Below the pieces are notes generated by a model. The model ran no database searches. It saw only the letters and a program-made list of their open reading frames with translations, and was not told the DNA's origin. A DNA stretch of 64,000 nt, taken from positions 20,708,001-20,772,000 of the forward strand of contig OZ281497.1 of NCBI GenBank assembly GCA_965637545.1, in the 5' to 3' direction. Source of the DNA: Phallusia mammillata. Its lineage: Eukaryota. This document shows positions 3,635 to 18,147 of this stretch, piece by piece. Position 1 is the first letter of the stretch; every line of letters starts with the position of its first letter. Position numbers and translations under genes: made by a program.

Positions 3635-5173
3635 TCAATAAACCCAGCTTAAAGGTAACCACTGGGGGTTAGATTTCTCTGTTTGAACCGACTCATGAAT
3701 GACTCTGCTGGTTTCTTCAACAGTAGAAAATGCAACTGTAAGGTTGTACATGTGAGCGTATGTTTGAATTTCTGTATCACTGTTTTCAGATGAAGGCAAG
3801 TGGGTTTCAATGTGCACCACAAAAGGCATAAACTCCGAGTTCATGATAAATTTTAGGTTCTGCGATGCCATATTAAGGAGGCAAAACTTTTTGGACTTCA
3901 TAACATCTCGAATGGAGCCATACTTTAAGCCATGGATATGGGCATCTTTCTCTGCATGCTCAAGATACTCATTAGACCTGATGCCTACCATCATCTTTTC
4001 TTTTTTGCACACAACATAGTGCCTATCATTTTGAAGAGATTCATTGGAGCTGTGGGTGACTGGAATTTTATAAACATCTTTAAAAAGTTCAGTCATTTTC
4101 CATTTTACTTGCGATGCAACAGATTTGTCTTCTGAAACCACTACTATGACCTTACGTGGAAATTCTGGCATTCGACACACTTCTTCATACATGACCGGCG
4201 TATGTTCATCATCAAACTTGGTGTTCTGAGAAAACTTGTACATTTCACAAACTGGTTTTATAACCTGCTCAGAACGGCTTGGTTTTATCGAGCGACGTTC
4301 CTCAAACTGGGGACTGGGGATAAGTCCGGCTCTGCCTTTTGGTTCACCTGATTTATCCACAAACCGTGCTTGCCACCATTGCTTGTCCGAGCAGTCAACA
4401 ATCTGAAGAATATCCCTTTTCTTAAAAGACAAACCAGCATCTCTGCTAGGTATATCCATGTCCGCTGTTGCATCATAATCGTAGTTACACTGCACAAACA
4501 TTATCATCTCATCAGTTGGTTTGTTGTAACTTGGAACAACTTTGAGGATAAAAGATGGTGTCGGCTTGTTCAGAAACTCTTTCAGTACCTCTGGTTTTCC
4601 TTTCACAGGCTTTCCATTCACTTCTTTTATAATATCACCAACACTCAACAAGCCTTGTTTGTGAACAAGGGCACCATGTATTATCCTTGTGACTACAACT
4701 TCATGATTTACCACAGCAACCATCATCCCCAATGGTTCATTGCGAGGTTTCGATAATCCGACCATTCTTACAGCATTTTTATAGTTGGGAATCTTGATGG
4801 GTGGACTTGAAAACTGGTTGACATACTTTTGATTAATGGACCGCTGTTCAGCAATTTTGTCATGAGCTTGTAGCACACCACTAAAATGGGCTTGTTGCAA
4901 TATTCCAGTTAGCTCAGCAATAGCATTACTTTTTATTCCATGTATGTCATGAAGGATTTGTGTCACAATTTCACACGAATTGTTCTGTTCGGGATTGACC
5001 ATTTTGTTATCCAGAGTATCATGAGCTCTTGCTAGAGATTGCACCACAGGACAATCCATTAGTAGCTTCAAAAATAGCACATCATTTTTGACCTCGTTAT
5101 TCTGTCCATCGTCAAGTTTTCTCAAATTTTCAAGAACTGCTTGAATAGAAGCTTGTGTATTTTCCTGAGGCAT
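3635..5173 (-). CDS. Intronless p55-subfamily MAGUK (MPP2/MPP6/Varicose-like): L27-L27-PDZ-SH3-GK, 512 aa
   Basis: Single open ORF with L27 (FLKLLMDCPVVQSLARAHD), PDZ (VRMVGLSKPRNEPLG), SH3 (YDYDATADMDIPSRDAGLSFKKRDILQIV...WWQA, GLIPS) and a GK-like region ending QWLPLSWVY, the typical MPP2/6 C-terminus. A splice acceptor TTTTGCAG lies 60 nt upstream (exon starts at 5233). MPP2 versus MPP6 is not resolvable by eye. Confidence 0.92.
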   Translation of the reverse strand: MPQENTQASIQAVLENLRKLDDGQNNEVKNDVLFLKLLMDCPVVQSLARAHDTLDNKMVNPEQNNSCEIVTQILHDIHGIKSNAIAELTGILQQAHFSGVLQAHDKIAEQRSINQKYVNQFSSPPIKIPNYKNAVRMVGLSKPRNEPLGMMVAVVNHEVVVTRIIHGALVHKQGLLSVGDIIKEVNGKPVKGKPEVLKEFLNKPTPSFILKVVPSYNKPTDEMIMFVQCNYDYDATADMDIPSRDAGLSFKKRDILQIVDCSDKQWWQARFVDKSGEPKGRAGLIPSPQFEERRSIKPSRSEQVIKPVCEMYKFSQNTKFDDEHTPVMYEEVCRMPEFPRKVIVVVSEDKSVASQVKWKMTELFKDVYKIPVTHSSNESLQNDRHYVVCKKEKMMVGIRSNEYLEHAEKDAHIHGLKYGSIRDVMKSKKFCLLNMASQNLKFIMNSEFMPFVVHIETHLPSSENSDTEIQTYAHMYNLTVAFSTVEETSRVIHESVQTEKSNPQWLPLSWVY

Positions 5174-7504: not shown

Positions 7505-8809
7505 TTACTTTTCTAATGGTACCCGCGAAACAGTTTCTTTGTAAACAGCTCTCTGGCATATGTCACAAGACTTACAAAATCGCTTGACGTCGCCATTAAT
7601 TCCTGGCCAGTAAAAACTCCCAAGAATCATATCAAGGGTTTTTTTAGTGCCCATGTGACCACCCATTATAGATTCATGTGCTGTTTCCATTATTTTCGGG
7701 CGCAGCTTGACTGGCACAACAAGCTGGTAAATACACTTTCCTCTGTTAACTTTTGGATTTTGGAATTCTCGATACAACAACCCGTTGTCATTTTTAAAAC
7801 AGGTAATTTGCTTGCCTTTAACCCGTTCTTCTTTCATGCTCCACAAAGATTTCATTGAAACATCAACCTTTTGAGCGGTCTCGAAACCTTCTTTATCGAT
7901 TATCGACCATTTTCCACTCTCTTGAACCACCAAAGGATTTCTTTTTCTCTGAACAGAATGTGCCCGCGTCTTAACTGCGCAACCAACCTCCCGTATTTGA
8001 TATGGATCATCAGGACTTCTGGAGCCTGGAACATTTCCAATAATTAAATCATACAAGGTATTTGGCAAACACAGCGCATCTACTTCTCCTTTGAAGTATG
8101 GCGAATCTACAGAAATTCTTGCCATTTCTGCTTCGATTGTCCTCGAATCTAACAGCGTAACTACGCCTTTTTGGCCGTTTAGTTGACAATCTTCAACAAA
8201 CTCTTTTCTGACGATAACTCCGGTGCAGCCTGTATCACGAAGTACGTTTACAGCTTGATTGCCAATCAGCCCTTTTCGCAGAGGCAACTTTTGCGAGTTT
8301 GGCCTCTTATTTTTATCCAAGTATTTTAGCTGTGAATAGTCACCAGTCAATCGAGATATTTTATTTGTGAAAGACGTCGTACCGGCACTTCCACTCAGCT
8401 TAATTGTCCTTGAAGCAACAAACCGGGATTTACAGTCCTTTGCCGCATGTCCCGATTTACTACAAATAAAACAAGTGCGCGATGTGCGTGATTCCTCTTT
8501 CAGCTTGGGGCAAAACTTTGCCCTGTGTCCGTACTCCATGCAGTTAAAACACTGCGTGTTTGTGTCAAAAGTAGCTTGACCATCGTTCGTCAGCAAACAT
8601 GTATTGCCGTTATCGGCCAAGTTCTTGTCATGCGCAAAAAGAAACTGATCTGCCACAGTAGCCAACGCGTCTAATGTCTTGGGTGCTTGTTCATGCAAAT
8701 ATATGGAAAGTTCTTTAGAGCACGATTTAGTAAACTGTTCTTTTACAAATAAATTGCGCACTTCTTTCCATTCCGCAGAAACACCAGACATTTCAACCCA
8801 TTTTTGCAA
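7505..8809 (-). CDS. Gag C-terminus, aspartic protease and integrase zinc-binding region (truncated polyprotein)
   Basis: CFNCMEYGHRAKFC and CFICSKSGHAAKDC knuckles; VLRDTGCTGV protease; HESIMGGHMG...FYWPG...CKSCDICQ HHCC motif, then a stop where the integrase core should be. The frame is open upstream to ~8868 (RGAKPKSDENSTQF). Confidence 0.9.
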   Translation of the reverse strand: MQKWVEMSGVSAEWKEVRNLFVKEQFTKSCSKELSIYLHEQAPKTLDALATVADQFLFAHDKNLADNGNTCLLTNDGQATFDTNTQCFNCMEYGHRAKFCPKLKEESRTSRTCFICSKSGHAAKDCKSRFVASRTIKLSGSAGTTSFTNKISRLTGDYSQLKYLDKNKRPNSQKLPLRKGLIGNQAVNVLRDTGCTGVIVRKEFVEDCQLNGQKGVVTLLDSRTIEAEMARISVDSPYFKGEVDALCLPNTLYDLIIGNVPGSRSPDDPYQIREVGCAVKTRAHSVQRKRNPLVVQESGKWSIIDKEGFETAQKVDVSMKSLWSMKEERVKGKQITCFKNDNGLLYREFQNPKVNRGKCIYQLVVPVKLRPKIMETAHESIMGGHMGTKKTLDMILGSFYWPGINGDVKRFCKSCDICQRAVYKETVSRVPLEK

Positions 8810-8861
8810 ATAGTTCTGTAAACGAACTATAAACTGTGTCGAATTTTCGTCTGACTTTGGT

Positions 8862-9428
8862 TTAGCACCACGGCCTGTAAGACCTGTAACCGTCCTCGGT
8901 TAGATCGTATCTGTCTAAAAGTGCTTTCTTGAGAACATCGTAGTTGACTGCGTCAGCGTCAGATAATCTCGAATAAACTTCCAGCGCTCTACCTGTAAGA
9001 AGCGCACTGAGAGAGGTTGCCCAGTCGTTCCTGTCCCATTTGTTACTAGAAGCAAATCTTTCGTACCTGAGGATGTAACTATCGAGCTCATCTTGACCGT
9101 CCACAAACGGTGGCAGCTTCGGCACCTTTGCATGACTTGTTGTTGCGACCTCCTTGGCAGACTTCAACTCCGCAAGTTGTAAATCCATTTTCTTAAGCTC
9201 CATTCTGTGTTCACGCTCAATTTTCGCCTCGGCCATTCGCCGTTCTTCAAGCTTGCGTGTTTCATTAATTTTAATCTCTTCGAGTCTTCTTGCTTCACGT
9301 TCGTTTTCACGCCTCTCTTTGCGTTCGTCCCGATCACGTAACTGCTGGTCATTGACCCACTTGACCAATGCTTCCCCTGAAAGTCCCATTGCCTTTCCAG
9401 TTTCACTCAAAGCTTGAACTGTTGACAT
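8862..9428 (-). CDS. Gag N-terminal part, frameshifted from the rest at ~8870
   Basis: Charged coiled-coil followed by KVPKLPPFVDGQDELDSYILRYERFA...W...LSALLTGRALEVY, typical of SCAN-like gypsy gag. Confidence 0.88.
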   Translation of the reverse strand: MSTVQALSETGKAMGLSGEALVKWVNDQQLRDRDERKERRENEREARRLEEIKINETRKLEERRMAEAKIEREHRMELKKMDLQLAELKSAKEVATTSHAKVPKLPPFVDGQDELDSYILRYERFASSNKWDRNDWATSLSALLTGRALEVYSRLSDADAVNYDVLKKALLDRYDLTEDGYRSYRPWC

Positions 9429-9858: not shown

Positions 9859-9944
9859 TATTTCCATAGCATGTAAGCGATTGCCACCTAGCGATAAACT
9901 ATATTTCCATGGCATGTAAGCGATTGCCACCTAGCGATAAACTA
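9859..9944. repeat. 43-bp tandem duplication
   Basis: TATTTCCATAGCATGTAAGCGATTGCCACCTAGCGATAAACTA twice, with one mismatch. Confidence 0.9.
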
Positions 9945-9969
9945 AAGGCAATGGCTGCTAGTGCAACTG

Positions 9970-10941
9970 GGGTCGACTAAAAGCCTGACTGCCTGACTAG
10001 CCTGACTGGCCTGACTTTGGCGGCAGTGTTTCACAAAATATTTTTCGGACTGACTTGTTTAAAAAGTATGACTACTGTTGATTGGGAAAGGCCTGACTAC
10101 GTAAAGCGTCATCCGAGAAGGCCTGACTTTCGTGATTGTCGATTGGGAAAGGCCTGACTGCAATATGAAAGGGCCTGACAGCAATATAATAGGCCTGACT
10201 GCAATATAGAAGGCCCGACTTGGTGATTGTCGATTGGGAAAGGCCTGACTTAGGTGATTGTCGATTGGAAAAGGCCTGACTGCGTAAAGCGTCATCAGAG
10301 AAGGCCTGACTTTCGTAATTGTCGATTGTGAAACGCCTGACTGCGTAAAACGTCATCAGAGAAGGCCTGACTTGCATGATTGTCGATTGGAAAAGGCCTG
10401 ACTTTCGTGATTGTCGATTGGGAAAGGCCTGACTGCGTAAAGCGTCATCAGAGAAGCCCTGACTTTCGTCATTGTCGATTGTGAAACGCCTGACTGCGTA
10501 AAACGTCATCAGAGAAGGCCTGACTTTCGTAATTGTCGATTATGAAACGCCTGACTGCGTAAAACGTCATCAGAGAAGGCCTGACTTGCGTGATTGTCGA
10601 TTGGGAAAGGCCTGACTGCGTAAAGCGTCATCAGAAAAGGCCTGACTTGCGTGATTGTCGATTGGAAAAGGCCTGACTTTCGTGATTGTCGATTGTGAAA
10701 CGCCTGACTGCGTAAAACGTCATCAGAGAAGGCCTGACTTGCGTGATTGTCGATTGGAAAAGGCCTGACTTTCGTGATTGTCGATTGGAAAAGGCCTGAC
10801 TGCGTAAAGTGTCTTTAGAGAAGGCCTGACTTAGGTGATTGTCGATTGGGAAAGGCCTGACTGCAATATTAAAAGCCTGACTTGGGTGATTGTCGATTGG
10901 GAAAGGCTTAAATGCAACATGAAAGGGCCTGACTGCAATAT
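9970..10941 (+). repeat. Left arm of the MULE, outer part: TIR plus modular tandem array
   Basis: Core AGGCCTGACT alternates with spacer types GCGTAAAGCGTCATCAGAGA, TTCGTGATTGTCGATTGGGAA and GCAATAT(A/G)...; period ~20-31 bp. Confidence 0.95.
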
Positions 10942-13900
10942 GAGTTGAGTTGAGTTGAGTTTATTTCGCCGGTGATACAAATCGTAGCAGCACAATTGCA
11001 CTAAAATATTCACCAAGCCGGAAATAGCTGCGCAACGTTGGGACGTTATAAAGCGCGACAAAGGTAAGGGCACAATTGGTGGAAAGATGATAAACGCGCT
11101 GCAGCTACACCGTTACTAATAGCGTTATGTGGCAGGGACTCACAACGGAGGGTGAGGTTGGCGCATTGGGACATCAAGACTGGGGGGGAAACGTTGGTGG
11201 AACCAGCCAGGTTGGGACCTAATCTAACCACCCGTGTTAGGGAAAGAGGGTGGGGTTCAACAGGAAAAGAAACCACCAAAAGAAACCCTGTTGGATAGTT
11301 TCCGGCGCCGGAAGGAAGGGTGCAGCACAAACATAGTGACGATTGAACATGAAAGTTGTACAACATAAAAAAGAAAAAACAAAAGAGGAAAAAAAAACGG
11401 AATTAAAAAAAAAACAGATCAATGAGTCCATAGATTCGTGTGATACAAGGGTAGGGGGAACCTCATCAGCTCAGCTGTTGCCATTCCGTGACACTTTGTA
11501 TAGTTGATGGGTCGCGAACTGCGGATGTTGTAACTGAAAAAGAAAAGCTCCGAGCGGCAGCGTTAGTTTTTTTGATACAACACAGGGACTTTTTTATTAG
11601 GTGCATACACAACAAATCACACAAAAGAACAGTGGTTATAAGTGAACGTTTTCCAAAGCAGTGTAATAATATTGTGCTTGGTCATGATAAAAAGCATGAC
11701 CAGTAAAAACAGTAATAGCTGCTGGTGAATCATTATTCACCTCACAATGCAAGTAAGATAACTAGTGCGACAAAAAACACGTGTGCAAAAAGCAAAACCA
11801 GTGTGGCAACACAGTAATAGTGATTTTAATTTGACAAATGTACTATACTAGTAAGACATGCAGTTCAGTGAATGTGCACAGGATGAAAACACATGCTCTC
11901 AGATGGTTGCTTGACAGTGCCCACCAAAAAACTCATCATGGCAAACAAAGGAATACTAATATAATGGGGACATCTGAAAAACAATAATTTAACAGTGATA
12001 AGTGAGTAAACCAACTAAGATAATAAGTCTAGGTGCTGTCCGGCTGCTATTATTCCAGGAGTGTATTTTTTACTTGTTTTGTAAATATTTTTTTCGAGGT
12101 GGGAACAACATCAAATTTAAGGTCTGTCCAGCATTTAGGACCTGTATATTTAATGGATTGTTGAATAGTACTGCTGCTGCACAAGGGTATAGTATAACCA
12201 CTTTCGGTTTGTCGAGTACTTACACCAATGGTTACCATTTTTCGTTGAAAGAAATTGTCAAATGCTTCAGGTAATCTACCGTTTTGGTAATTGTATAAAT
12301 ACATTGCGCACTCAAGTTTAAACTGTTGCTCGTTTGTTAATATTTTATAATGTTTCAATGATTCTTCCAGGTTTTGATATTTAAAGCCATAGGTCATGCA
12401 CAGAAACTTGTTGCAGATGTTTTGAATCTTATTCTTAAGGTTTATATTACCATGATACCAGCATGTTATTCCATACATTATTTGACTTCTGACAAGTGAT
12501 TGATAAATACAATGTAATGCTTGCTTTGTTAACAAAGGCCTTATTTTTATAGTCAAGTAATATATTCTTTTAATTTTTTGTAAAATGTATGTCATGTGTT
12601 CTTTCCATGACAAGCTTTCATGAATAGTTAGCCCAAGGAATTGCACAGATTTGGCTATTGCTATTTGCTGGCCATTTATTTCCAACTTACATATTGGCTT
12701 AGTTTTAGAGTTTGCAAGTCTAAAGTGAACACCTTTGGTTTTTGCAACATTAAGTGATAATTTATTGGTTATTAGCCATTCATTTATTTTTACCAGTTGC
12801 AAGTTTACAGTGTTAAATAATGACTCCGTATCTCTATTTTTAAAAAGGAGGGAAACATGATTTGCCTGTCCTGATGTTATGCTATTTGGCAGATCATTAA
12901 TGTATATTAAAAATAGTAACGGGCCAAGATTACTTCCCTGGGGTACACCACAACTTATTGGTAGGTCATTAGATGTTTTGTTGCCAAGTTGGACCCTCTG
13001 TTTTCTATTAGACAGGTAACTCTTAAAAAAGTCTAAGGCAACCCCTCTGATGCCATGATGATTTAGTTTTCCCATTAATATAGTGTGGTCTATAGTATCA
13101 AATGCCTTTGATAGGTCAAGAAATATTCCAACTGCCTGTTGATTGTTCTGACAGGCATCTGTGATACTCGATATTAATAAGGAAGCAGCATGGTGGGTAG
13201 AATGACCTTTTCGAAACCCAAATTGTTTTGAATTAAAAAAGTTTTTGTTGTTTAAAAACGTATAAAGTCTATTGTACACAATTTTTTCCAGAATTTTAGA
13301 TAGGTTTGATAATAAACTTATAGGCCTGTAGTTACTAGCTGATTTCATATCCCCCTTTTTATGAATAGGTACTACTTTTGCTGTTTTAAAAGCCTGAATA
13401 AAAACTCCATTTTCTAAACAAAGGTTAAATATATGGCTCAGACAATTAATTATTCCTTGTGGTAGACATTTTATGACATTTGAAGGCAAGCCATCTATTC
13501 CACAACTTAATTTACTTTGTATTTTTTCAATGATTATCTTAATTTCACCAGGGCAGGTCGGAAAGAGAAAAATAGAGGATTTGGATGTGGGTCCTAAATA
13601 CATCTGATAAGAGGTTTTGGGCTTATCCAACTGGCTAACCAACTTTTCTGCAACAGTAGAGAAATACTTATTAAAGTGATCAGCTATGTCTATTTGGTTT
13701 GTGATCAATTTTCCATCTACTTTAAGGTTTAACATGTAGTTCGTGGTCTTATTTCGACCTATTAAACTGTTTATTGTTTTCCACGTCTGTTTTGCATTAT
13801 TCCTGTGTTTACCAAACAGCTTTTGATAATAAGTTTTCTTTTTGGAATTTACCATTCGATAATATTGGTTGCGCATTTGGTGGTACTGAAGTTTTCTAGC

Positions 13901-14855
13901 TGTCGTTTTCTTTTTAAGATATTTTTTGTATGCAGTTTGTTTTGCTTTATTGAGATTATTCAATTTTTTATCATACCATTCGTTTTTCCCAGTTTTTCCA
14001 TTACTTTTTGAAAGGGGAAATGCTTTTTCAAAACTAGTTTGTAAATGTGCTAGTAAAATGTCAAATGCTTCATTTGGGTCTGTTTTATTAGTTATTAAGT
14101 CATAGTCAAGTAGATTTAGTTGGGTGATAAAAGAAGTATAGTTTTGTCTATTGTAGCACCTGTGGGGTTGGACTTTTCTTGTGTCAAATTTTTCAGGGCA
14201 ACAGAACATCACTGGAAAGTGGTCTGATATGTCATCTAATAAAATGTATGTGTCAACTGGGTGTAATACATTGGTCCATATATGATCAATTACAGTTGCA
14301 GAAGAGTCGGTTATTCTAGTTGGTTTGTTGATGAGAGGCATAAAGTTATTCTCAAACATGCAGTCAGTGAACATGTTAACTTGGAGATTTGTTGAGTCCA
14401 GAAGGTTTAAATTAAAGTCTCCTATGATATATACATCTGCATTGGGCTGTTTTGTTTTAACCATGCTATTATTAAGATTTTTTAAAAAGCTATCAAAAAT
14501 ATTTTTATCCTGCCCTGGTGACCGGTAAATTGTTCCACAGGTTATTATTTTTTTATTAACTTGAATGTCGACAAACAATGACTCGAATACTTTTTCATTC
14601 ATTATAGTTAAATCCTCTCTAACATTGTATGATAACATGTTGTTTACATACAACCCTACACCACCTCCTCTGTGCATATTCCTTGGGTTCGAAATAAAGT
14701 TATAACCAGGCAAATTGTAAAACATTCTATGTTCAGGTTTAAGCCATGTTTCTGTGACTCCAATTATGTGTGGTTTGAAATGTAATCCAGCTAACAAAGC
14801 CTGCAGTTTCGAGAAGTTGTGAGGGTTGTTTAATGATCTTATGTTAATGCTATAT
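10942..14855 (-). mobile_element. 5'-truncated CR1/L2-group LINE inserted in the MULE left arm
   Basis: APE+RT ORF2, ~1.1-kb 3' UTR ending GAAATAAA(CTCAA)n at 10942-10966. It splits an array unit at GCAATAT^AGAAGGCC; ATAT occurs at both junctions (10938-10941, 14852-14855), either a 4-bp TSD or microhomology. Confidence 0.93.
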
Positions 14856-14944
14856 AGAAGGCCTGACTTGGGTGATTGTCGATTGGGAAAGGCCTGACTT
14901 AGGTGATTGTCGATTGGAAAAGGTCTGACTGCGTAAAGCGTCAT
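12050..14944 (-). CDS. LINE ORF2 (AP endonuclease + reverse transcriptase), open but lacking the YADD box; first ~30 codons come from the MULE array
   Basis: APE motifs NIRS, TETW, IYRSP, GDFN, IDHI and SDHFPV are intact. RT motifs YRPISLL, QFGFR, FLDLSKAFDTIDH and GVPQGSNLGPLLFLIYINDL are present, followed by SITSGQANHVSLLF with no ADD. Confidence 0.9.
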   Translation of the reverse strand: MTLYAVRPFPIDNHLSQAFPNRQSPKSGLLYSINIRSLNNPHNFSKLQALLAGLHFKPHIIGVTETWLKPEHRMFYNLPGYNFISNPRNMHRGGGVGLYVNNMLSYNVREDLTIMNEKVFESLFVDIQVNKKIITCGTIYRSPGQDKNIFDSFLKNLNNSMVKTKQPNADVYIIGDFNLNLLDSTNLQVNMFTDCMFENNFMPLINKPTRITDSSATVIDHIWTNVLHPVDTYILLDDISDHFPVMFCCPEKFDTRKVQPHRCYNRQNYTSFITQLNLLDYDLITNKTDPNEAFDILLAHLQTSFEKAFPLSKSNGKTGKNEWYDKKLNNLNKAKQTAYKKYLKKKTTARKLQYHQMRNQYYRMVNSKKKTYYQKLFGKHRNNAKQTWKTINSLIGRNKTTNYMLNLKVDGKLITNQIDIADHFNKYFSTVAEKLVSQLDKPKTSYQMYLGPTSKSSIFLFPTCPGEIKIIIEKIQSKLSCGIDGLPSNVIKCLPQGIINCLSHIFNLCLENGVFIQAFKTAKVVPIHKKGDMKSASNYRPISLLSNLSKILEKIVYNRLYTFLNNKNFFNSKQFGFRKGHSTHHAASLLISSITDACQNNQQAVGIFLDLSKAFDTIDHTILMGKLNHHGIRGVALDFFKSYLSNRKQRVQLGNKTSNDLPISCGVPQGSNLGPLLFLIYINDLPNSITSGQANHVSLLFKNRDTESLFNTVNLQLVKINEWLITNKLSLNVAKTKGVHFRLANSKTKPICKLEINGQQIAIAKSVQFLGLTIHESLSWKEHMTYILQKIKRIYYLTIKIRPLLTKQALHCIYQSLVRSQIMYGITCWYHGNINLKNKIQNICNKFLCMTYGFKYQNLEESLKHYKILTNEQQFKLECAMYLYNYQNGRLPEAFDNFFQRKMVTIGVSTRQTESGYTIPLCSSSTIQQSIKYTGPKCWTDLKFDVVPTSKKIFTKQVKNTLLE

Positions 14945-15245
14945 CAGAGAAGGCCTGACTTGGGTGAATGTCGATTGGAAAAGGCCTGACTTTCGTGATT
15001 GTCGATTGTGAAACGCCTGACTGCGTAAAGCGTCATCAGAGAAGGCCTGACTGCGGTAATTGTCGATTGGAAAAGGCCTGACTTTCGTGATTGTCGATTG
15101 GGAAAGGTCTGCCTGCGTAAAACGTCATCATAGAAGGCCTGACTGCGGCGATTGTCGATTGGGAAAGGCCTGACTGCGTAAAGCGTCACCAGATAAGACC
15201 TGGCTTGGATAATTATCGATTAATGAAAGGCCTGACTGCGCAGAA
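14856..15245 (+). repeat. Left arm of the MULE, inner part (array resumes after the LINE)
   Basis: Same AGGCCTGACT core and spacers, same orientation as 9970-10941. Confidence 0.93.
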
Positions 15246-15429
15246 GATTATGGGGAAAGGCTTTTTGTACTAATGTATTACCACATCGTTTATCGTTTTT
15301 TAAAATTAGTGCAATCCATTCTAAGCTTAGTTACAAACGATGCAAAATATTTTATACGTAAATAAAAAGGTAATTCGCAACCACCTACTGCTTGCATCAA
15401 ACACCTGGTCAACACAAAACGAAAGGTAT

Positions 15430-15625
15430 TTATTGAACATGCTGTGGCCGGTTTTGGGGAGTATTATAATTGCATAATTTACAAACATAGTATAATGACG
15501 CGGACGAAACTTCTCCGCATGTTGAGTGAATCCATCTTCGGCCGACACAGCACATGTATTGGATCTCCTTTTCGGTAAAACCTCCTTTACACCAAGGCGC
15601 TGAACAATCAGACCAGCCACTAATG
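15430..15625 (-). pseudogene. PHD-finger remnant of the MULE protein
   Basis: My translation of a frame not in the ORF track: SDCSAPWCKGGFTEKEIQYMCCVGRRWIHSTCGEVSSASLYYVCKLCNYNTPQNRPQHVQ*. This is C4HC3 spacing with one ligand apparently changed to Gly. Confidence 0.75.
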
Positions 15626-15756
15626 GAGGGATGAAGGTTGTCGGCCAGAAAAAAATGGCCCGATTCACTGATGACCTATACCAGCAAAACGCGATTAATG
15701 GTTTTGCAGTTTAAAATTCAACACTTTGCGTACCTAAGGCTCAAACATTTTCGCCG

Positions 15757-16224
15757 TTATTGCCCCACATATTCGTTTTTTTCTTGTGTTGTCAACTTGA
15801 CAATTGGGTTGAGGGAGGATGAATCTTTTCTAGTCAACATCGTGTGTACAACATAATTTCTTGCACAAGTTAAATCGAATGAGGCAAGTGGGCATTTTGA
15901 TAAAATACAATAGGCATTGACAATGACATGAATACCACAATCAAAGCTGTTGGTCTGTTGGGGTGCGGAGTTGAAGCGAATTACGGACCAGGAAACCATG
16001 TCACGCAGAAGTCCAGCGGCAGCATAAAACGAGTTTATGAATCTCAAAACTGTTTGACCGATGTTTTTTATCCTTGTGGATGACGTTCTCGACACAGAAT
16101 CAAACAGGTAAATCTGTTGTGTTTGGACAATTGCCACTGCAAGCAACCAATGGCAGGATTTGTGACAAACGGGGAAAAAAGAAGATATCCCGATTAAGCG
16201 GGGCATGTCGCTGAATAAATCCAA
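15757..16224 (-). pseudogene. Ulp1/SENP (peptidase C48) SUMO-protease domain of the MULE
   Basis: HWLLAVA...YLFDS...PQQTNSFDCGIHV gives the His-Asp-Cys triad plus the oxyanion Gln. Confidence 0.9.
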
Positions 16225-16368
16225 TAATGCAGTCTAAGCGATTATGTTCTAAAGCAGTGAACATGTGGGAAGGTACAACTAAGGCATAGGAAGTTGACTC
16301 GCTAATAAATTCTGTAATGCAGATTTCTATTGAGTAGTCATCTATCCATTTTGCTGTTTTAACCAGCT

Positions 16369-17290
16369 CTATAATGTTCCAAGTTGTCGGTTTTCAACTT
16401 TTTTGATAGGCATATCTGAAACATTTTCCCACGGGTATGGTATTTTGTTTTCTTCCTTCGCATCTTTTTTCTTAAGAATAGGAGATGCTGCTAGACTTTT
16501 TGCTGGCTCACTAAACTCAGAATTTATTTTTTCTTTGATAGGCGTTGAATAATGGGGTGTCGGAAGGGTGGAATCTGGAGCTGGGATGGTGTCGTAATCA
16601 TAATCTCTGGTTCTCGATTTTTTTCTCCCAGACTTTCCCTCGCCTCTTCTAGACCGTTTGCGTAACATGGACAGAGAATATGTTTTTTTGTCTCCAAGTG
16701 AAACTCCGACTGCCATTTCTACCGCGTAAATGTGGAAACACTTGCCAGTACTGTTGCATGAACACCTTGATTTTGGAAAAAGTTGTACTGCGTGCGATAA
16801 TTTAGAAAACCTGTTGTATACTGTAAATGTTTGACAGAAAATGACAGTGTAACGGCATTATTTTTTACGCAATCAACTGCCAAAGCTTTTTGTGACGTGC
16901 GGTGCGTTGGGTGATTTTTCACAGACTTTGCAATAGATTGAAACTTGCTCTTAATTTCTTTTGCAATCGATCCTGCCGATGGTATTTTTTCATGGGCCCA
17001 TTTGCATTCCTGTGCTTCTTTAATAGGAAATTCCGATTTGAGGGTACCATTTCCAAAACCACAAAAACTTCTTTCAAACTTATACAATGTATACACTTGA
17101 TAACGATGTAGAGCAAGTACCGTGCAGTCTACTGGCATCTCCGACCATTCAGACCATTCCTTAAAAACTTTGTTCAATGATTCAGAAATGTTATTAGTGC
17201 ACACGATGTCGTCCCCAAATGCTGAAAACTTGTTGGTGACAAACCGTCAAGTGTGATTGAAAAGGTCATTTAAACGTTTTAACGTAACGT
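16369..17290 (-). pseudogene. MULE transposase C-terminal half with SWIM finger, frameshifted; N-terminal part deleted
   Basis: CTNNISESLNKVFK (catalytic Glu motif). In a shifted frame CSCNSTGKCFHIYAV (SWIM, 16732-16764) runs into ORF 16369-16716. Only ~30 codons lie between the right arm and the TNN motif. Confidence 0.8.
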
Positions 17291-17294
17291 GACA

Positions 17295-17727
17295 TTTTAC
17301 GCAGTCAGGCCTTTCCCAATCGACAATCACGAAAGTCAGGCCATCTCTGATGACGCTTTACGCAGTCAGGCGTTTCCTAATCGACAATCACGAAAGTCAG
17401 GCCTTTCCCGATCGACAATCAACTAAGTCGGACCTTCTATATTGCAGTCAGGCCTTTTATATTGCAGTCAGGCCCTTTCATGTTGCATTTAGGCCTTTCC
17501 CAATCGACAATCACCCAAGTCAAGCTTTTAATATTGCAGTCAGGCTTTTCCAATCGACAATTACCTAAGGCAGTTCTTCTCGGATGACGCTTTACGTAGT
17601 CAGGCCTTTCCCAATCAACAGTAGTCATACTTTTGAAACAAGTCAGTCCAAAAAATATTTTGTGAAACACTGCCGCCAAAGTCAGGCCAGTCGGACCAGT
17701 CAGGCAGTCAGGCTTTTAGTCAAACCC
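17295..17727 (-). repeat. Right arm of the MULE (inverted modular array plus TIR)
   Basis: AGTCAGGCCT cores with the same spacers in inverted orientation; ~430 bp versus ~1360 bp for the left arm. Confidence 0.95.
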
Positions 17728-18147
17728 GTGCAACTGCAGCAGTACAACTACAAAAGGTTATAGTAGTTGAATTCGTTGATTTACGTAACGTTATTGTCTG
17801 AACCACACGCTCAAACAACTTACATAAATATATAAGATTGGGTTTTCCATGCATTTTGCTAACTCCGAGCAATTTTACACGTAAACAGCGCGAATCCTGT
17901 TACACTGTTGCGTGTTTCAAAAATTTGTTTATCAAAACGTGTTAGACTTTTTTTACAGAACTTGTGTAAGTGCTTTGCTGATTTAAACATGTACCTAAAT
18001 ATGCACGGTTTGTTCTATTGACTTTTAAACGTGAGTTCACAGTGCTTGGAACTAACATACAGATCTGAGATTTTTACATCAATTGGTGTTGGTGTCACAT
18101 GTTTACTTTTGCAGAGAAACAAAAGTATGTATTAAAATTTAAACAAA

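What the first reader, a model, noticed from the sequence alone, without database searches (positions are those of the whole stretch)
9970..17727. Foldback-armed Mutator element encoding transposase-SWIM-SUMO protease-PHD finger
A 9-bp TSD and matched termini define one 7.76-kb element. Its interior carries, in order on the minus strand, the MULE catalytic Glu motif, a SWIM finger, a Ulp1 protease with an intact His-Asp-Cys triad, and a PHD finger that is invisible in the ORF track. A deSUMOylase plus a histone-reader module is what a counter-silencing device would look like, since SUMOylation is central to TE repression in animals (inference). Ulp1-bearing MULEs are known in plants (Kaonashi), and as I recall foldback-like animal MULEs are described (Phantom, Rehavkus), so the family may be new rather than the concept.
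Basis: partly seen in the sequence, partly recalled or inferred. Interest (0 to 1): 0.7.

Follow-up and report, generated by a model that had tools for sequence, protein, structure and literature searches.

The report
Decayed Mutator transposon with Ulp1-PHD tail
This is a real but dead copy of a sea-squirt "jumping gene" of the Mutator kind, whose cutting enzyme is fused to a SUMO-removing protease and a histone-reading finger. That fusion is old, widespread in animals and already noted in print, but nobody has tested what it does.

Summary
The boundaries hold. There is a 9-bp target duplication (GTGCAACTG), 183-nt terminal inverted repeats (92%) and inverted subterminal 31/61/92-bp arrays. 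All 51 copies of GCCTGACT in the window lie in these arms.

- A 3.9-kb LINE sits inside the left arm.
- The transposon proper is only about 3.85 kb.
- Its gene is a wreck. The N-terminal 270-480 residues, including both catalytic Asp, are deleted at about 17271. There are at least three frameshifts and several stops, and the fourth PHD cysteine is Gly.

The domain order is genuine and belongs to the family: DDE Glu motif, SWIM, Ulp1, PHD. Intact animal relatives are colinear with it, including P0151, P0077, and mite, clam and Ciona proteins. One relative (L002) has the same 9-bp duplication, GGGT termini and satellite arms. The His-Asp-Cys triad is kept in 26 of 35 relatives. The protease profile matches SENP1/Ulp1 and the finger matches KDM5A/B PHD3.

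So this is not a one-off capture. Ulp1(+PHD) Mutator transposases of hydra and lancelet, and PHD-tailed Ciona ones, were described in 2006-2010. The scan also noted similar elements elsewhere in this genome.

Verdict: new member of a known kind. The counter-silencing idea is untested.

The parts
9961..9969 (.). left copy of the 9-bp target site duplication GTGCAACTG
   Evidence: read directly
17728..17736 (.). right copy of the 9-bp target site duplication GTGCAACTG
   Evidence: Read directly. In other runs, contigs diverge into unlike flanks just behind 17727 (table 7).
9970..10152 (+). left terminal inverted repeat, starting 5'-GGGTCGACTAAAAGCC, with four tandem AGCCTGACT units
17545..17727 (-). 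right terminal inverted repeat, 92% complementary to the left one
9970..10942 (+). outer part of the left (3'-side) arm: 31/61/92-bp subterminal array, with GCCTGACT every ~30.5 bp
10943..14856 (-). Nested 5'-truncated LINE. It has an APE+RT ORF (12050-14944; the upstream end is read-through into the array) and a (GAGTT)n tail at 10943-10960.
   Evidence: The array continues in register on both sides.
14857..15260 (+). inner part of the left arm array
15472..15615 (-). PHD finger remnant (C4HC3 pattern). The fourth Cys is Gly at 15541-15543. All contigs of four other runs read A at 15543, which gives a Cys codon.
   Evidence: (table 3)
15811..16348 (-). Ulp1/SENP-type Peptidase_C48 domain, split over two frames. 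The N-lobe is at 16103-16393 and the catalytic lobe at 15760-16233. His, Asp, Gln and Cys are all present.
16570..16635 (-). conserved basic/acidic linker motif KSGRKKxR..DYDY..PAPDS (candidate nuclear localisation signal; inference)
16732..16764 (-). SWIM-type CxCxnCxH finger (CSCNSTGKCFH)
   Evidence: Pfam SWIM is only sub-threshold in relatives.
16842..17270 (-). C-terminal third of the MULE DDE transposase core, with the catalytic Glu codon at 17181-17183 in TNNISES. A frameshift to the SWIM frame lies near 16833-16857.
17262..17727 (-). Right (5'-side) arm, shortened. The internal deletion breakpoint is at about 17271, where contigs of other copies run on into unlike sequence.
   Evidence: (table 8, records 8 and 32)

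Best explanation
Window 9970-17727 is a non-autonomous, decayed copy of a multi-copy cut-and-paste DNA transposon of the Mutator (MULE/MuDR) superfamily.

Intact members of the family encode a single protein. In order, it has an N-terminal CG-1-like DNA-binding region, the DDE transposase core, a SWIM finger, a SENP1/Ulp1-type cysteine protease and a C-terminal PHD finger. The gene sits between long inverted arms built of a short motif repeated dozens of times.

This copy inserted with a 9-bp duplication. It then lost the first 270-480 codons and the inner part of its 5' arm by an internal deletion. It also picked up frameshifts, stops and a PHD ligand substitution, and was hit by a LINE in its 3' arm.

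Shown: the boundaries, the domain homology, the decay, family-wide conservation of the fusion and its catalytic residues, and multi-copy status in the host species.

Inferred:
- The repeated arm motif (GCCTGACT here, TCGGAAT in the relative L002) is the transposase binding site.
- The PHD finger tethers the transposase to histone H3 tails.
- The protease removes SUMO from chromatin-bound factors at the element or its target. My preferred reading is that this keeps the element's chromatin permissive or eases repair and integration.
For: Structure:
- TSD, TIR and arrays.
- Nested LINE.

Domains:
- Peptidase_C48 at 1.9e-12 on window:15760-16233:-.
- All four coding pieces are colinear with P0077 and P0151.
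- tblastn finds homology only at 15472-17279, starting at residue 269 of P0151 and 483 of P0152.
- Relatives carry Pfam MULE + C48 (+PHD, +CG-1, weak SWIM).
- Relatives have the canonical MULE motifs YDTTF, TDREK, CxNH and TNNxSESxN.

Family-wide conservation:
- By my count from the table, 22 of 24 relatives with at least 400 residues after the core have a Ulp1-like region.
- The His-Asp-Cys triad is complete in 26 of 35. Four others have a substitution at the Asp, and the rest are truncated at one or more of these positions.
- The Ulp1 profile matches SENP1 at 2e-27, yeast Ulp1 at 2e-25 and SENP8 at only 1.6e-12.
- The tail profile matches KDM5B and KDM5A PHD3 at 3e-8 and 2e-7, including the Cx4C spacing.
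- The P0151 element in L002 has a 9-bp TSD (TAAAAGTTT), GGGT termini, 1.1-kb TIRs at 95% and 71-bp arrays. All 72 TCGGAAT copies lie in its arms.
- The tree puts the window copy in a 99/100-supported clade of 18, of which 12 carry Ulp1. Its nearest rows are P0152 and P0156 of Ciona intestinalis.

Multi-copy in the host:
- 16-23 contigs per run cross the terminus.
- 5-8 unlike flanks follow 17727.
- Diverged contigs lie over the Ulp1 and PHD region.
Against: - No intact copy from this genome could be retrieved, so the full-length architecture in this species is inferred from relatives and from short contigs.
- Pfam does not call MULE, SWIM or PHD on the window pieces themselves.
- Several relatives lack Ulp1/PHD in their gene models (Hydra, P0152, P0156). 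Most of these end within 250 residues of the core, so truncation and true absence cannot be told apart.
- Only one of the two cage tryptophans of KDM5A PHD3 is kept; the other is Gln. H3K4me3 reading is therefore not established.
- No RNA run holds the stretch.
- No experiment anywhere bears on the function of the protease.
Confidence: 0.85

Rival explanations
1. The Ulp1-PHD module is a counter-silencing device in the strict sense the reader proposed. The PHD brings the deSUMOylase to the element's own chromatin, where it strips SUMO from the piRNA/heterochromatin machinery.
For: - The module and its catalytic residues are kept across distant animal relatives.
- The protease is of the SENP1/Ulp1 type.
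- SUMO dependence of TE silencing in animals is established knowledge, recalled rather than tested here.
Against: - Nothing here links the protease to silencing factors.
- The same fusion appears on Ginger1 transposases, where its authors suggested a role in DNA repair after transposition (PMC2836005).
- No expression data were obtained.
Confidence: 0.3
2. The module serves integration rather than expression. The PHD acts as a target-site tether to particular H3 tails. The protease acts on SUMOylated repair or chromatin proteins at the break, or processes the polyprotein itself.
For: - The PHD profile is closest to histone-tail readers.
- Bao et al. proposed a repair role for Ulp1/OTU domains on transposases.
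- Babu et al. proposed polyprotein processing for OTU-fused MULE transposases.
Against: - No insertion-site survey could be done.
- One cage Trp is replaced by Gln.
- No Gly-Gly processing site was examined.
Confidence: 0.3
3. The element belongs to the Rehavkus / FB-NOF branch rather than to canonical MuDR-type MULEs.
For: - It has a 9-bp TSD, long inverted termini with subterminal tandem repeats and a PHD finger. These are the published Rehavkus features (PMC6446971; Tribolium preprint).
- Earlier agents filed other foldback Mutator elements of this genome under Rehavkus/NOF.
Against: - The transposase of relatives has the canonical MULE motifs (YDTTF, TNNxSESxN) plus a SWIM finger, and hits Pfam MULE and Transposase_mut.
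- The Rehavkus sequences glimpsed in the supplement of PMC6446971 read D(A/S)TGSVV and, in Rehavkus-3_TC, TNNAIERYFGILK.
- No tree with Rehavkus references could be built.
Confidence: 0.15
4. The Ulp1/PHD part is a host gene fragment captured once by this copy (Pack-MULE style), or the locus is a domesticated host gene.
For: MULEs are known for gene capture (established knowledge). The scan noted a candidate domesticated relative elsewhere in this genome (unchecked).
Against: - The same order of domains occurs in relatives from mites, bivalves, tunicates and metagenomic eukaryotes at 27-44% identity.
- Diverged paralogous contigs cover the Ulp1 and PHD region in four runs.
- This copy has a TSD, TIRs, stops and frameshifts, which does not fit a host gene.
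Confidence: 0.03

Closest known systems
MuDR-type transposons of Hydra magnipapillata and Branchiostoma floridae with Ulp1 (and PHD) on the transposase (Repbase Reports 2008/2009, cited and aligned in Bao, Kapitonov & Jurka 2010, PMC2836005)
   Same: Animal Mutator transposase with a C-terminal Ulp1 catalytic domain. That paper's Fig. 1e aligns the Ulp1 and PHD domains of Ginger1 and Mutator transposases. Hydra vulgaris proteins are among the relatives found here.
   Different: Those Repbase sequences could not be fetched, so direct similarity is untested. The host here is a sea squirt. Whether those elements have foldback arms is unknown to me.
Intact element around P0151 (locus L002, ENA assembly ERZ22157276, contig ctg13718l)
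   Same: 9-bp TSD, GGGT termini, a short motif repeated at the tip and once or twice per subterminal array unit, and a single MULE-SWIM-Ulp1-PHD ORF. It shares a moderately supported branch (86/36) with the window copy in the tree.
   Different: Only 28-38% identical over the tblastn alignment. The arm motif and array unit are unrelated in sequence (TCGGAAT and 71 bp, against GCCTGACT and 31/61/92 bp). It is intact, and its host is unknown.
Rehavkus / FB-NOF foldback Mutator elements
   Same: [quoted passage not shown]
   Different: The transposase motifs of this family are canonical MULE with a SWIM finger. The Rehavkus motifs seen in the supplement differ. Ulp1 is not mentioned for Rehavkus in the papers read.
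Plant Ulp1-bearing MULEs (Kaonashi/KI-MULEs of Arabidopsis; melon, rice and maize elements)
   Same: Mutator-superfamily elements that carry a Ulp1-like protease domain (cited).
   Different: Plant lineage. As I recall, the protease is often a separate ORF or a captured and amplified gene rather than a conserved in-frame C-terminal fusion with PHD. Not tested here.
Ginger1 transposons of Hydra (for example Ginger1-9_HM with Ulp1 + PHD)
   Same: The same accessory module (Ulp1, sometimes with PHD) at the C-terminus of a transposase.
   Different: The transposase is a Gypsy-integrase-like DDE, not MULE. TSD and termini also differ.

Membership tests
Mutator (MULE/MuDR) superfamily | target site duplication of 8-11 bp (typically 9) | tested here: met
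   perfect 9-bp GTGCAACTG on both sides
Mutator (MULE/MuDR) superfamily | long terminal inverted repeats | tested here: met
   183 nt at 92%, extended by inverted arrays
Mutator (MULE/MuDR) superfamily | DDE transposase core with MULE signature motifs (DxTF, xDxxxx, CxxH, NxxESxN) | tested here: inconclusive
   In this copy only the Glu motif TNNISES is left; both Asp are deleted. Colinear relatives have all the motifs and hit Pfam MULE and Transposase_mut.
Mutator (MULE/MuDR) superfamily | SWIM CxCxnCxH finger after the core (many clades) | tested here: met
   CSCNSTGKCFH aligns with the conserved CxC..CxH of relatives. Pfam SWIM is only below threshold in relatives. One source names P0171 a SWIM-type domain protein.
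Rehavkus / MULE-NOF | 9-bp TSD, long TIRs with subterminal tandem repeats, PHD finger | tested here: met
   set against the published description
Rehavkus / MULE-NOF | transposase core clusters with Rehavkus reference sequences | tested here: inconclusive
   Motif level only. The family has YDTTF and TNNxSESxN. Rehavkus-3_TC/-1_HR have D(A/S)TGSVV, and Rehavkus-3_TC has TNNAIERYFGILK. No joint tree was possible.
Peptidase_C48 (Ulp1/SENP) | Pfam PF02902 above the gathering score | tested here: met
   47.9 bits against a cut-off of 20.7, E 1.9e-12. The family profile matches SENP1 at 2e-27.
Peptidase_C48 (Ulp1/SENP) | catalytic His, Asp, Cys and oxyanion Gln present | tested here: met
   H, D, Q and C in the window piece, and the H-D-C triad in 26 of 35 relatives
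Peptidase_C48 (Ulp1/SENP) | uninterrupted open reading frame through the domain | tested here: not met
   The N-lobe and the catalytic lobe lie in different frames, with a stop at 16369-71.
Peptidase_C48 (Ulp1/SENP) | SUMO-specific isopeptidase activity | not testable with these tools
   only sequence proximity to SENP1/2 and Ulp1 over SENP8
PHD finger | C4HC3 zinc ligands | tested here: not met
   7 of 8 ligands in this copy; Cys4 is Gly at 15541-43. Relatives have all eight, and contigs of other copies read a Cys codon there.
PHD finger | significant similarity to known PHD fingers | tested here: met
   The family tail profile matches KDM5B PHD3 at 3.2e-8, and also SHL, KDM5A, EBS, DIDO1, TAF3 and BPTF. 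Pfam PHD is above cut-off in P0162 and P0175.
PHD finger | aromatic cage for H3K4me3 | tested here: inconclusive
   The Trp before the His is conserved. The KDM5A W1625 equivalent is Gln. Another conserved Trp lies before Cys1.

The most novel reading that the evidence does not exclude
An ancient animal clade of Mutator transposons carries, as a selected in-frame part of the transposase, a chromatin-targeted deSUMOylase (a PHD reader plus a SENP1-type protease). This module counteracts SUMO-dependent silencing of the element. It would be an animal counterpart of the plant VANC-type anti-silencing factors, and decayed copies like this one are its fossils.
Probability: 0.25. Interest if true: 0.7.

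Novelty: new member of a known kind. Interest (0 to 1): 0.35.

Why it matters
The copy itself is junk. It does point to a well-conserved, multi-phylum family in which a transposase has kept a SENP1-type protease with its catalytic residues, and a PHD finger, for a very long time. That argues the module is needed for transposon fitness.

The fusion has been noted in Repbase-style reports and in two papers, but never tested. An intact relative such as P0151 (L002) would give a tractable system. One could ask whether mobile elements manipulate SUMO at chromatin to escape silencing, to choose targets or to manage repair.

It also shows that foldback-type arms built from arrays of binding motifs recur in canonical MULEs, not only in Rehavkus/NOF.

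Tried and rejected
- **Pfam on the window pieces.** Only Peptidase_C48 and the LINE domains hit. MULE, SWIM and PHD were not called, so those rest on alignment to relatives.
- **Ulp1 piece against 1.84 billion representatives.** The best hit was only 36% identical. Same-species copies are therefore not in the protein collections, and I spent no further big search on short pieces.
- **Exact look-up of two window ORFs to name the organism.** Neither is in the collection. The host is called a sea squirt only on the word of earlier notes, plus the nearness of a Ciona intestinalis protein in the tree.
- **L001, the contig of P0077.** No TIRs were found. At 4.7 kb the contig is probably too short to hold the arms.
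- **Empty-site or polymorphism test of this insertion.** Not possible. The element is longer than the 6,000 letters allowed for read laying.
- **Sequences of other copies in this species.** Read laying shows only positions and 30-letter ends.
- **Introns as an explanation of the frame changes.** Rejected. The pieces overlap or abut without room for introns, and in-frame stops lie inside conserved blocks.
- **One-off capture.** Rejected.
- **Structure prediction.** Skipped. Sequence profiles already gave SENP1 at 2e-27 and PHD at 3e-8, and the tool returns no coordinates with which to inspect an aromatic cage.


Full report
**Boundaries.**
- The sequence GTGCAACTG stands at 9961-9969 and again at 17728-17736.
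- Between them the element starts 5'-GGGTCGACTAAAAGCC and ends with the reverse complement of 5'-GGGTTTGACTAAAAGCC.
- The repeat finder gives arms 9969-10151 and 17545-17727: 183 nt, 92% complementary. Many further inverted pairs come from the subterminal arrays.
- Tandem Repeats Finder reports units of 31, 61 and 92 bp at 10210-10862 and 14856-15260, and inverted at 17303-17436. It also reports four 9-bp AGCCTGACT units at the very tip.
- The octamer GCCTGACT occurs 51 times in the 64-kb window, against about 1.1 expected. Forty copies lie on the + strand in the left arm and eleven on the - strand in the right arm, spaced about 30.5 bp. None lies elsewhere.

- The largest ORF in the region (12050-14944, minus strand, 964 aa) carries an Exo_endo_phos endonuclease and an RVT_1 reverse transcriptase.
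- Its 3' end is a (GAGTT)n run at 10943-10960. Its 5' end abuts the array at 14856.
- The array sequence continues in register across the insertion. CTGACTGCAATAT | LINE | AGAAGGCC matches the uninterrupted unit at 10193-10220.
- The ORF's apparent start is read-through into the MULE array. The LINE is thus 5'-truncated at the beginning of its endonuclease.
- Without it the transposon is about 3.85 kb, with a left (3'-side) arm of ~1.38 kb and a right (5'-side) arm of ~0.47 kb.

**The coding part.** It is only ~2 kb, on the minus strand, and broken.
- The first piece (17246-16722) begins a few residues before the MULE Glu motif CTNNISESLNK.
- The frame then shifts near 16833-16857 to a piece that holds the SWIM pattern CSCNSTGKCFH and a conserved KSGRKKxR..DYDY..PAPDS motif.
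- A stop follows at 16369-71. The Ulp1 N-lobe (W-IDDYSIE...) is in a third frame (16393-16103).
- The catalytic lobe is back in the second frame (16233-15760), with His, Asp, Gln and Cys present.
- Four stops follow: the one at 15757-59 that closes the catalytic lobe, and three more. Then comes a Cys/His tail at 15615-15472.
- Pfam calls Peptidase_C48 on the catalytic lobe (E 1.9e-12) but nothing else on the pieces.

**Relatives.**
- A full HMMER scan of 1.84 billion representative proteins with the Ulp1 piece gave 304 hits. The best was only 36% identical.
- Among the long hits, several combine Pfam MULE with Peptidase_C48: P0064 of Tetranychus urticae, P0077 and P0114. P0145 combines C48 with PHD.
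- P0077 (843 aa) is colinear with all window pieces.
- A word search with P0077 brought 67 proteins. The named ones are all from animals, apart from one filed under a bacterial MAG (see 'Noticed in passing'): Hydra vulgaris, Ciona intestinalis, Pinctada, Ruditapes, Ptychodera, Leptotrombidium, Tetranychus and two frogs. Many have precomputed MULE, C48 and PHD domains.
- P0151 and P0077 match the transposase end, the SWIM region, the Ulp1 and the PHD tail in that order.
- tblastn of eight relatives against the whole window hits only 15472-17279. The match begins at residue 269 of P0151, 251 of P0077, 451 of the Ciona protein P0156 and 483 of P0152.
- The window copy therefore lacks the N-terminal 270-480 residues. 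That region holds both catalytic Asp of the YDTTF and TDREK motifs seen in relatives, and the CG-1-like N-terminal region that Pfam finds weakly to moderately in P0175, P0164, P0154, P0152 and P0162.

**Is the module a family feature?**
- I searched family-specific HMMs built from the alignments. By my count from that table, 22 of 24 relatives with at least 400 residues after the transposase core have a Ulp1-like region, and most also have the PHD tail.
- Relatives without either almost all end within 250 residues of the core, as truncated models would.
- The catalytic His-Asp-Cys triad is complete in 26 of 35 Ulp1 regions. Four have a substitution at the Asp, and the rest are truncated at one or more of these positions.
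- A maximum-likelihood tree of the region from the Glu motif to PAPDS puts the window copy in a 99/100-supported clade of 18 rows, 12 of them Ulp1-bearing. Its nearest rows are P0152 (43% identity), P0156 of Ciona intestinalis, and P0151/P0155. Ulp1-bearing rows also occur in the other major clade.

**What kind of protease and finger?**
- A profile of the Ulp1 regions matches solved SENP1 (2e-27), yeast Ulp1 (2e-25), SENP2 and SENP5 far better than the NEDD8 protease SENP8 (1.6e-12). 'SUMO-type' is thus the best sequence-based call.
- A profile of the C-terminal tails matches PHD fingers only. The best hits are KDM5B PHD3 (3.2e-8), plant SHL and EBS, and KDM5A PHD3, including their unusual Cx4C first ligand pair.
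- Of the two cage tryptophans of KDM5A PHD3, the one before the His is conserved in the family. The other is Gln. A further conserved Trp lies before Cys1. The ligand is therefore open.
- In the window copy the fourth zinc ligand is Gly (GGC on the coding strand, 15541-43).
- Every contig of four other runs reads A instead of C at 15543, which makes that codon Cys (table 3). The substitution is therefore private to this copy or assembly.

**An intact relative with the same body plan.** The P0151 gene lies on a 1.7-Mb contig (locus L002).
- It is flanked by arms 1170-~3655 and 7874-8987, with 1,114 nt at 95% complementarity.
- The arms have 71-bp arrays of 32 and 12 units and 9-bp TCGGAATTG repeats at the tips.
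- The termini start GGGTAACACT, and the flanks show a perfect 9-bp duplication TAAAAGTTT.
- All 72 TCGGAAT heptamers lie in the arms, each arm in one orientation.
- Two elements with unrelated arm sequences thus share the same design: one short motif at the tip and in every array unit. This is why I infer that the motif is the transposase binding site.

**Status in the host species.** I laid Logan contigs of four runs of the same organism on 14800-17800.
- Sixteen to 23 contigs per run cross position 17693 near the terminus.
- Five to eight contigs per run diverge into mutually unlike sequence right behind 17727. These are other insertion sites, which confirms the end.
- Summed depth in the arms is tens of times the flank, and in the coding part only a few times the flank. 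This is only a rough guide.
- Diverged contigs (83-95% identity) lie over the PHD and Ulp1 region.
- Two contigs (X1 record 8 and X5 record 32) match 17042-17271 at 98% and then run on for 929 and 329 letters unlike the window. Other copies thus have more sequence exactly where this copy's homology to relatives starts. The N-terminal loss is therefore an internal deletion with its breakpoint at about 17271.
- No run on record as RNA holds the stretch.

**Comparison with what is known.**
- Dupeyron et al. 2019 list Rehavkus as having a 9-bp TSD, 26-400-bp TIRs, one ORF, a PHD finger and a minisatellite.
- A Tribolium study calls Rehavkus foldback transposons with variable subterminal tandem repeats.
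- Structurally the window element fits that description. But the transposase motifs of its relatives are canonical MULE (YDTTF, CxNH, TNNxSESxN, plus SWIM; Pfam MULE and Transposase_mut). The Rehavkus sequences visible in that paper's supplement read D(A/S)TGSVV and, in Rehavkus-3_TC, TNNAIERYFGILK.
- I therefore file it under the Mutator superfamily and leave the branch open, leaning to MuDR-type.
- Bao, Kapitonov and Jurka 2010 state that the Ulp1 domain is encoded in Mutator transposons of hydra, lancelet and several plants. They align the Ulp1 and PHD domains of Ginger1 and Mutator transposases.
- Babu et al. 2006 note MULE transposases of Ciona and C. elegans with a C-terminal PHD finger.
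- The concept is thus in print, though only in passing. What is added here is a tunicate family, its arm design, and family-wide evidence that the protease is kept intact.
- Earlier notes of this scan record similar Ulp1-bearing foldback Mutator elements on other pieces of this genome. I used them as leads only.

**Mechanism.**
- Shown: cut-and-paste insertion with a 9-bp duplication; arms made of oriented motif arrays; and a conserved SENP1-type catalytic centre and PHD finger fused to the transposase in intact relatives.
- Inferred: the N-terminal domain binds the arm motif. The PHD docks the enzyme on H3 tails. The protease removes SUMO from nearby proteins.
- I rate counter-silencing and help with target choice or repair about equally (0.3 each), and polyprotein self-processing as less likely.
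- This particular copy can do none of it. At best it could be moved in trans through its termini, and the LINE and the shortened 5' arm make even that doubtful.

**Verdict.** I rate it a new member of a known kind, of moderate interest because the function of the module is still untested.

Noticed in passing
window 10943-14856 (minus strand): A 5'-truncated LINE with an otherwise open 964-aa APE+RT reading frame and a (GAGTT)n tail sits inside the transposon's left arm. The open frame suggests a fairly recent insertion. Its clade was not determined.
   Followed up: partly
window 9859-9944: A perfect-looking 43-bp tandem duplication (2.0 copies, 97%) lies directly left of the target site duplication. 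Its origin is unknown.
   Followed up: no
window 7505-8809 (minus strand): A 434-aa ORF has Integrase_H2C2 and zf-CCHC domains. It is a fragment of a retroelement or Ginger-like element just upstream, so the region is rich in transposons.
   Followed up: partly
window 3635-5173 (minus strand): An intronless 512-aa ORF has L27, PDZ, SH3 and guanylate-kinase domains (a MAGUK). This confirms the domain content of another first-stage note on this window.
   Followed up: partly
window 15543: All contigs of four other runs read A where the window has C. This turns the Gly codon at the fourth PHD zinc ligand into Cys, so the substitution is private to this copy or to the assembled individual.
   Followed up: partly
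L002 1170-8987: An apparently intact 7.8-kb relative has a 9-bp TSD (TAAAAGTTT), 1.1-kb TIRs at 95%, 71-bp arrays (32 and 12 units) and an 881-aa MULE-SWIM-Ulp1-PHD ORF. A 157-aa ORF just upstream (4541-5014) may be the missing N-terminal exon.
   Followed up: partly
proteins P0175, P0164, P0154, P0152, P0162 (relatives): The N-terminus of full-length relatives gives weak to moderate Pfam hits to the CG-1 (CAMTA-type) DNA-binding domain. P0175 scores 30 bits, above the cut-off. A link between CG-1/CaRF-like DNA-binding domains and this MULE clade may be worth a look.
   Followed up: partly
protein P0194: A 1043-aa MULE-Ulp1-PHD protein of this animal family is filed at NCBI under a bacterial MAG (Candidatus Thiodiazotropha taylori) as 'Ulp1 family isopeptidase'. 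It is probably host-animal DNA binned into the symbiont genome.
   Followed up: no
protein P0024: One Ulp1 hit joins a Pox_A32-type packaging ATPase to Peptidase_C48. This suggests a Maverick/Polinton-like virus-type element and is unrelated to the MULE family.
   Followed up: no
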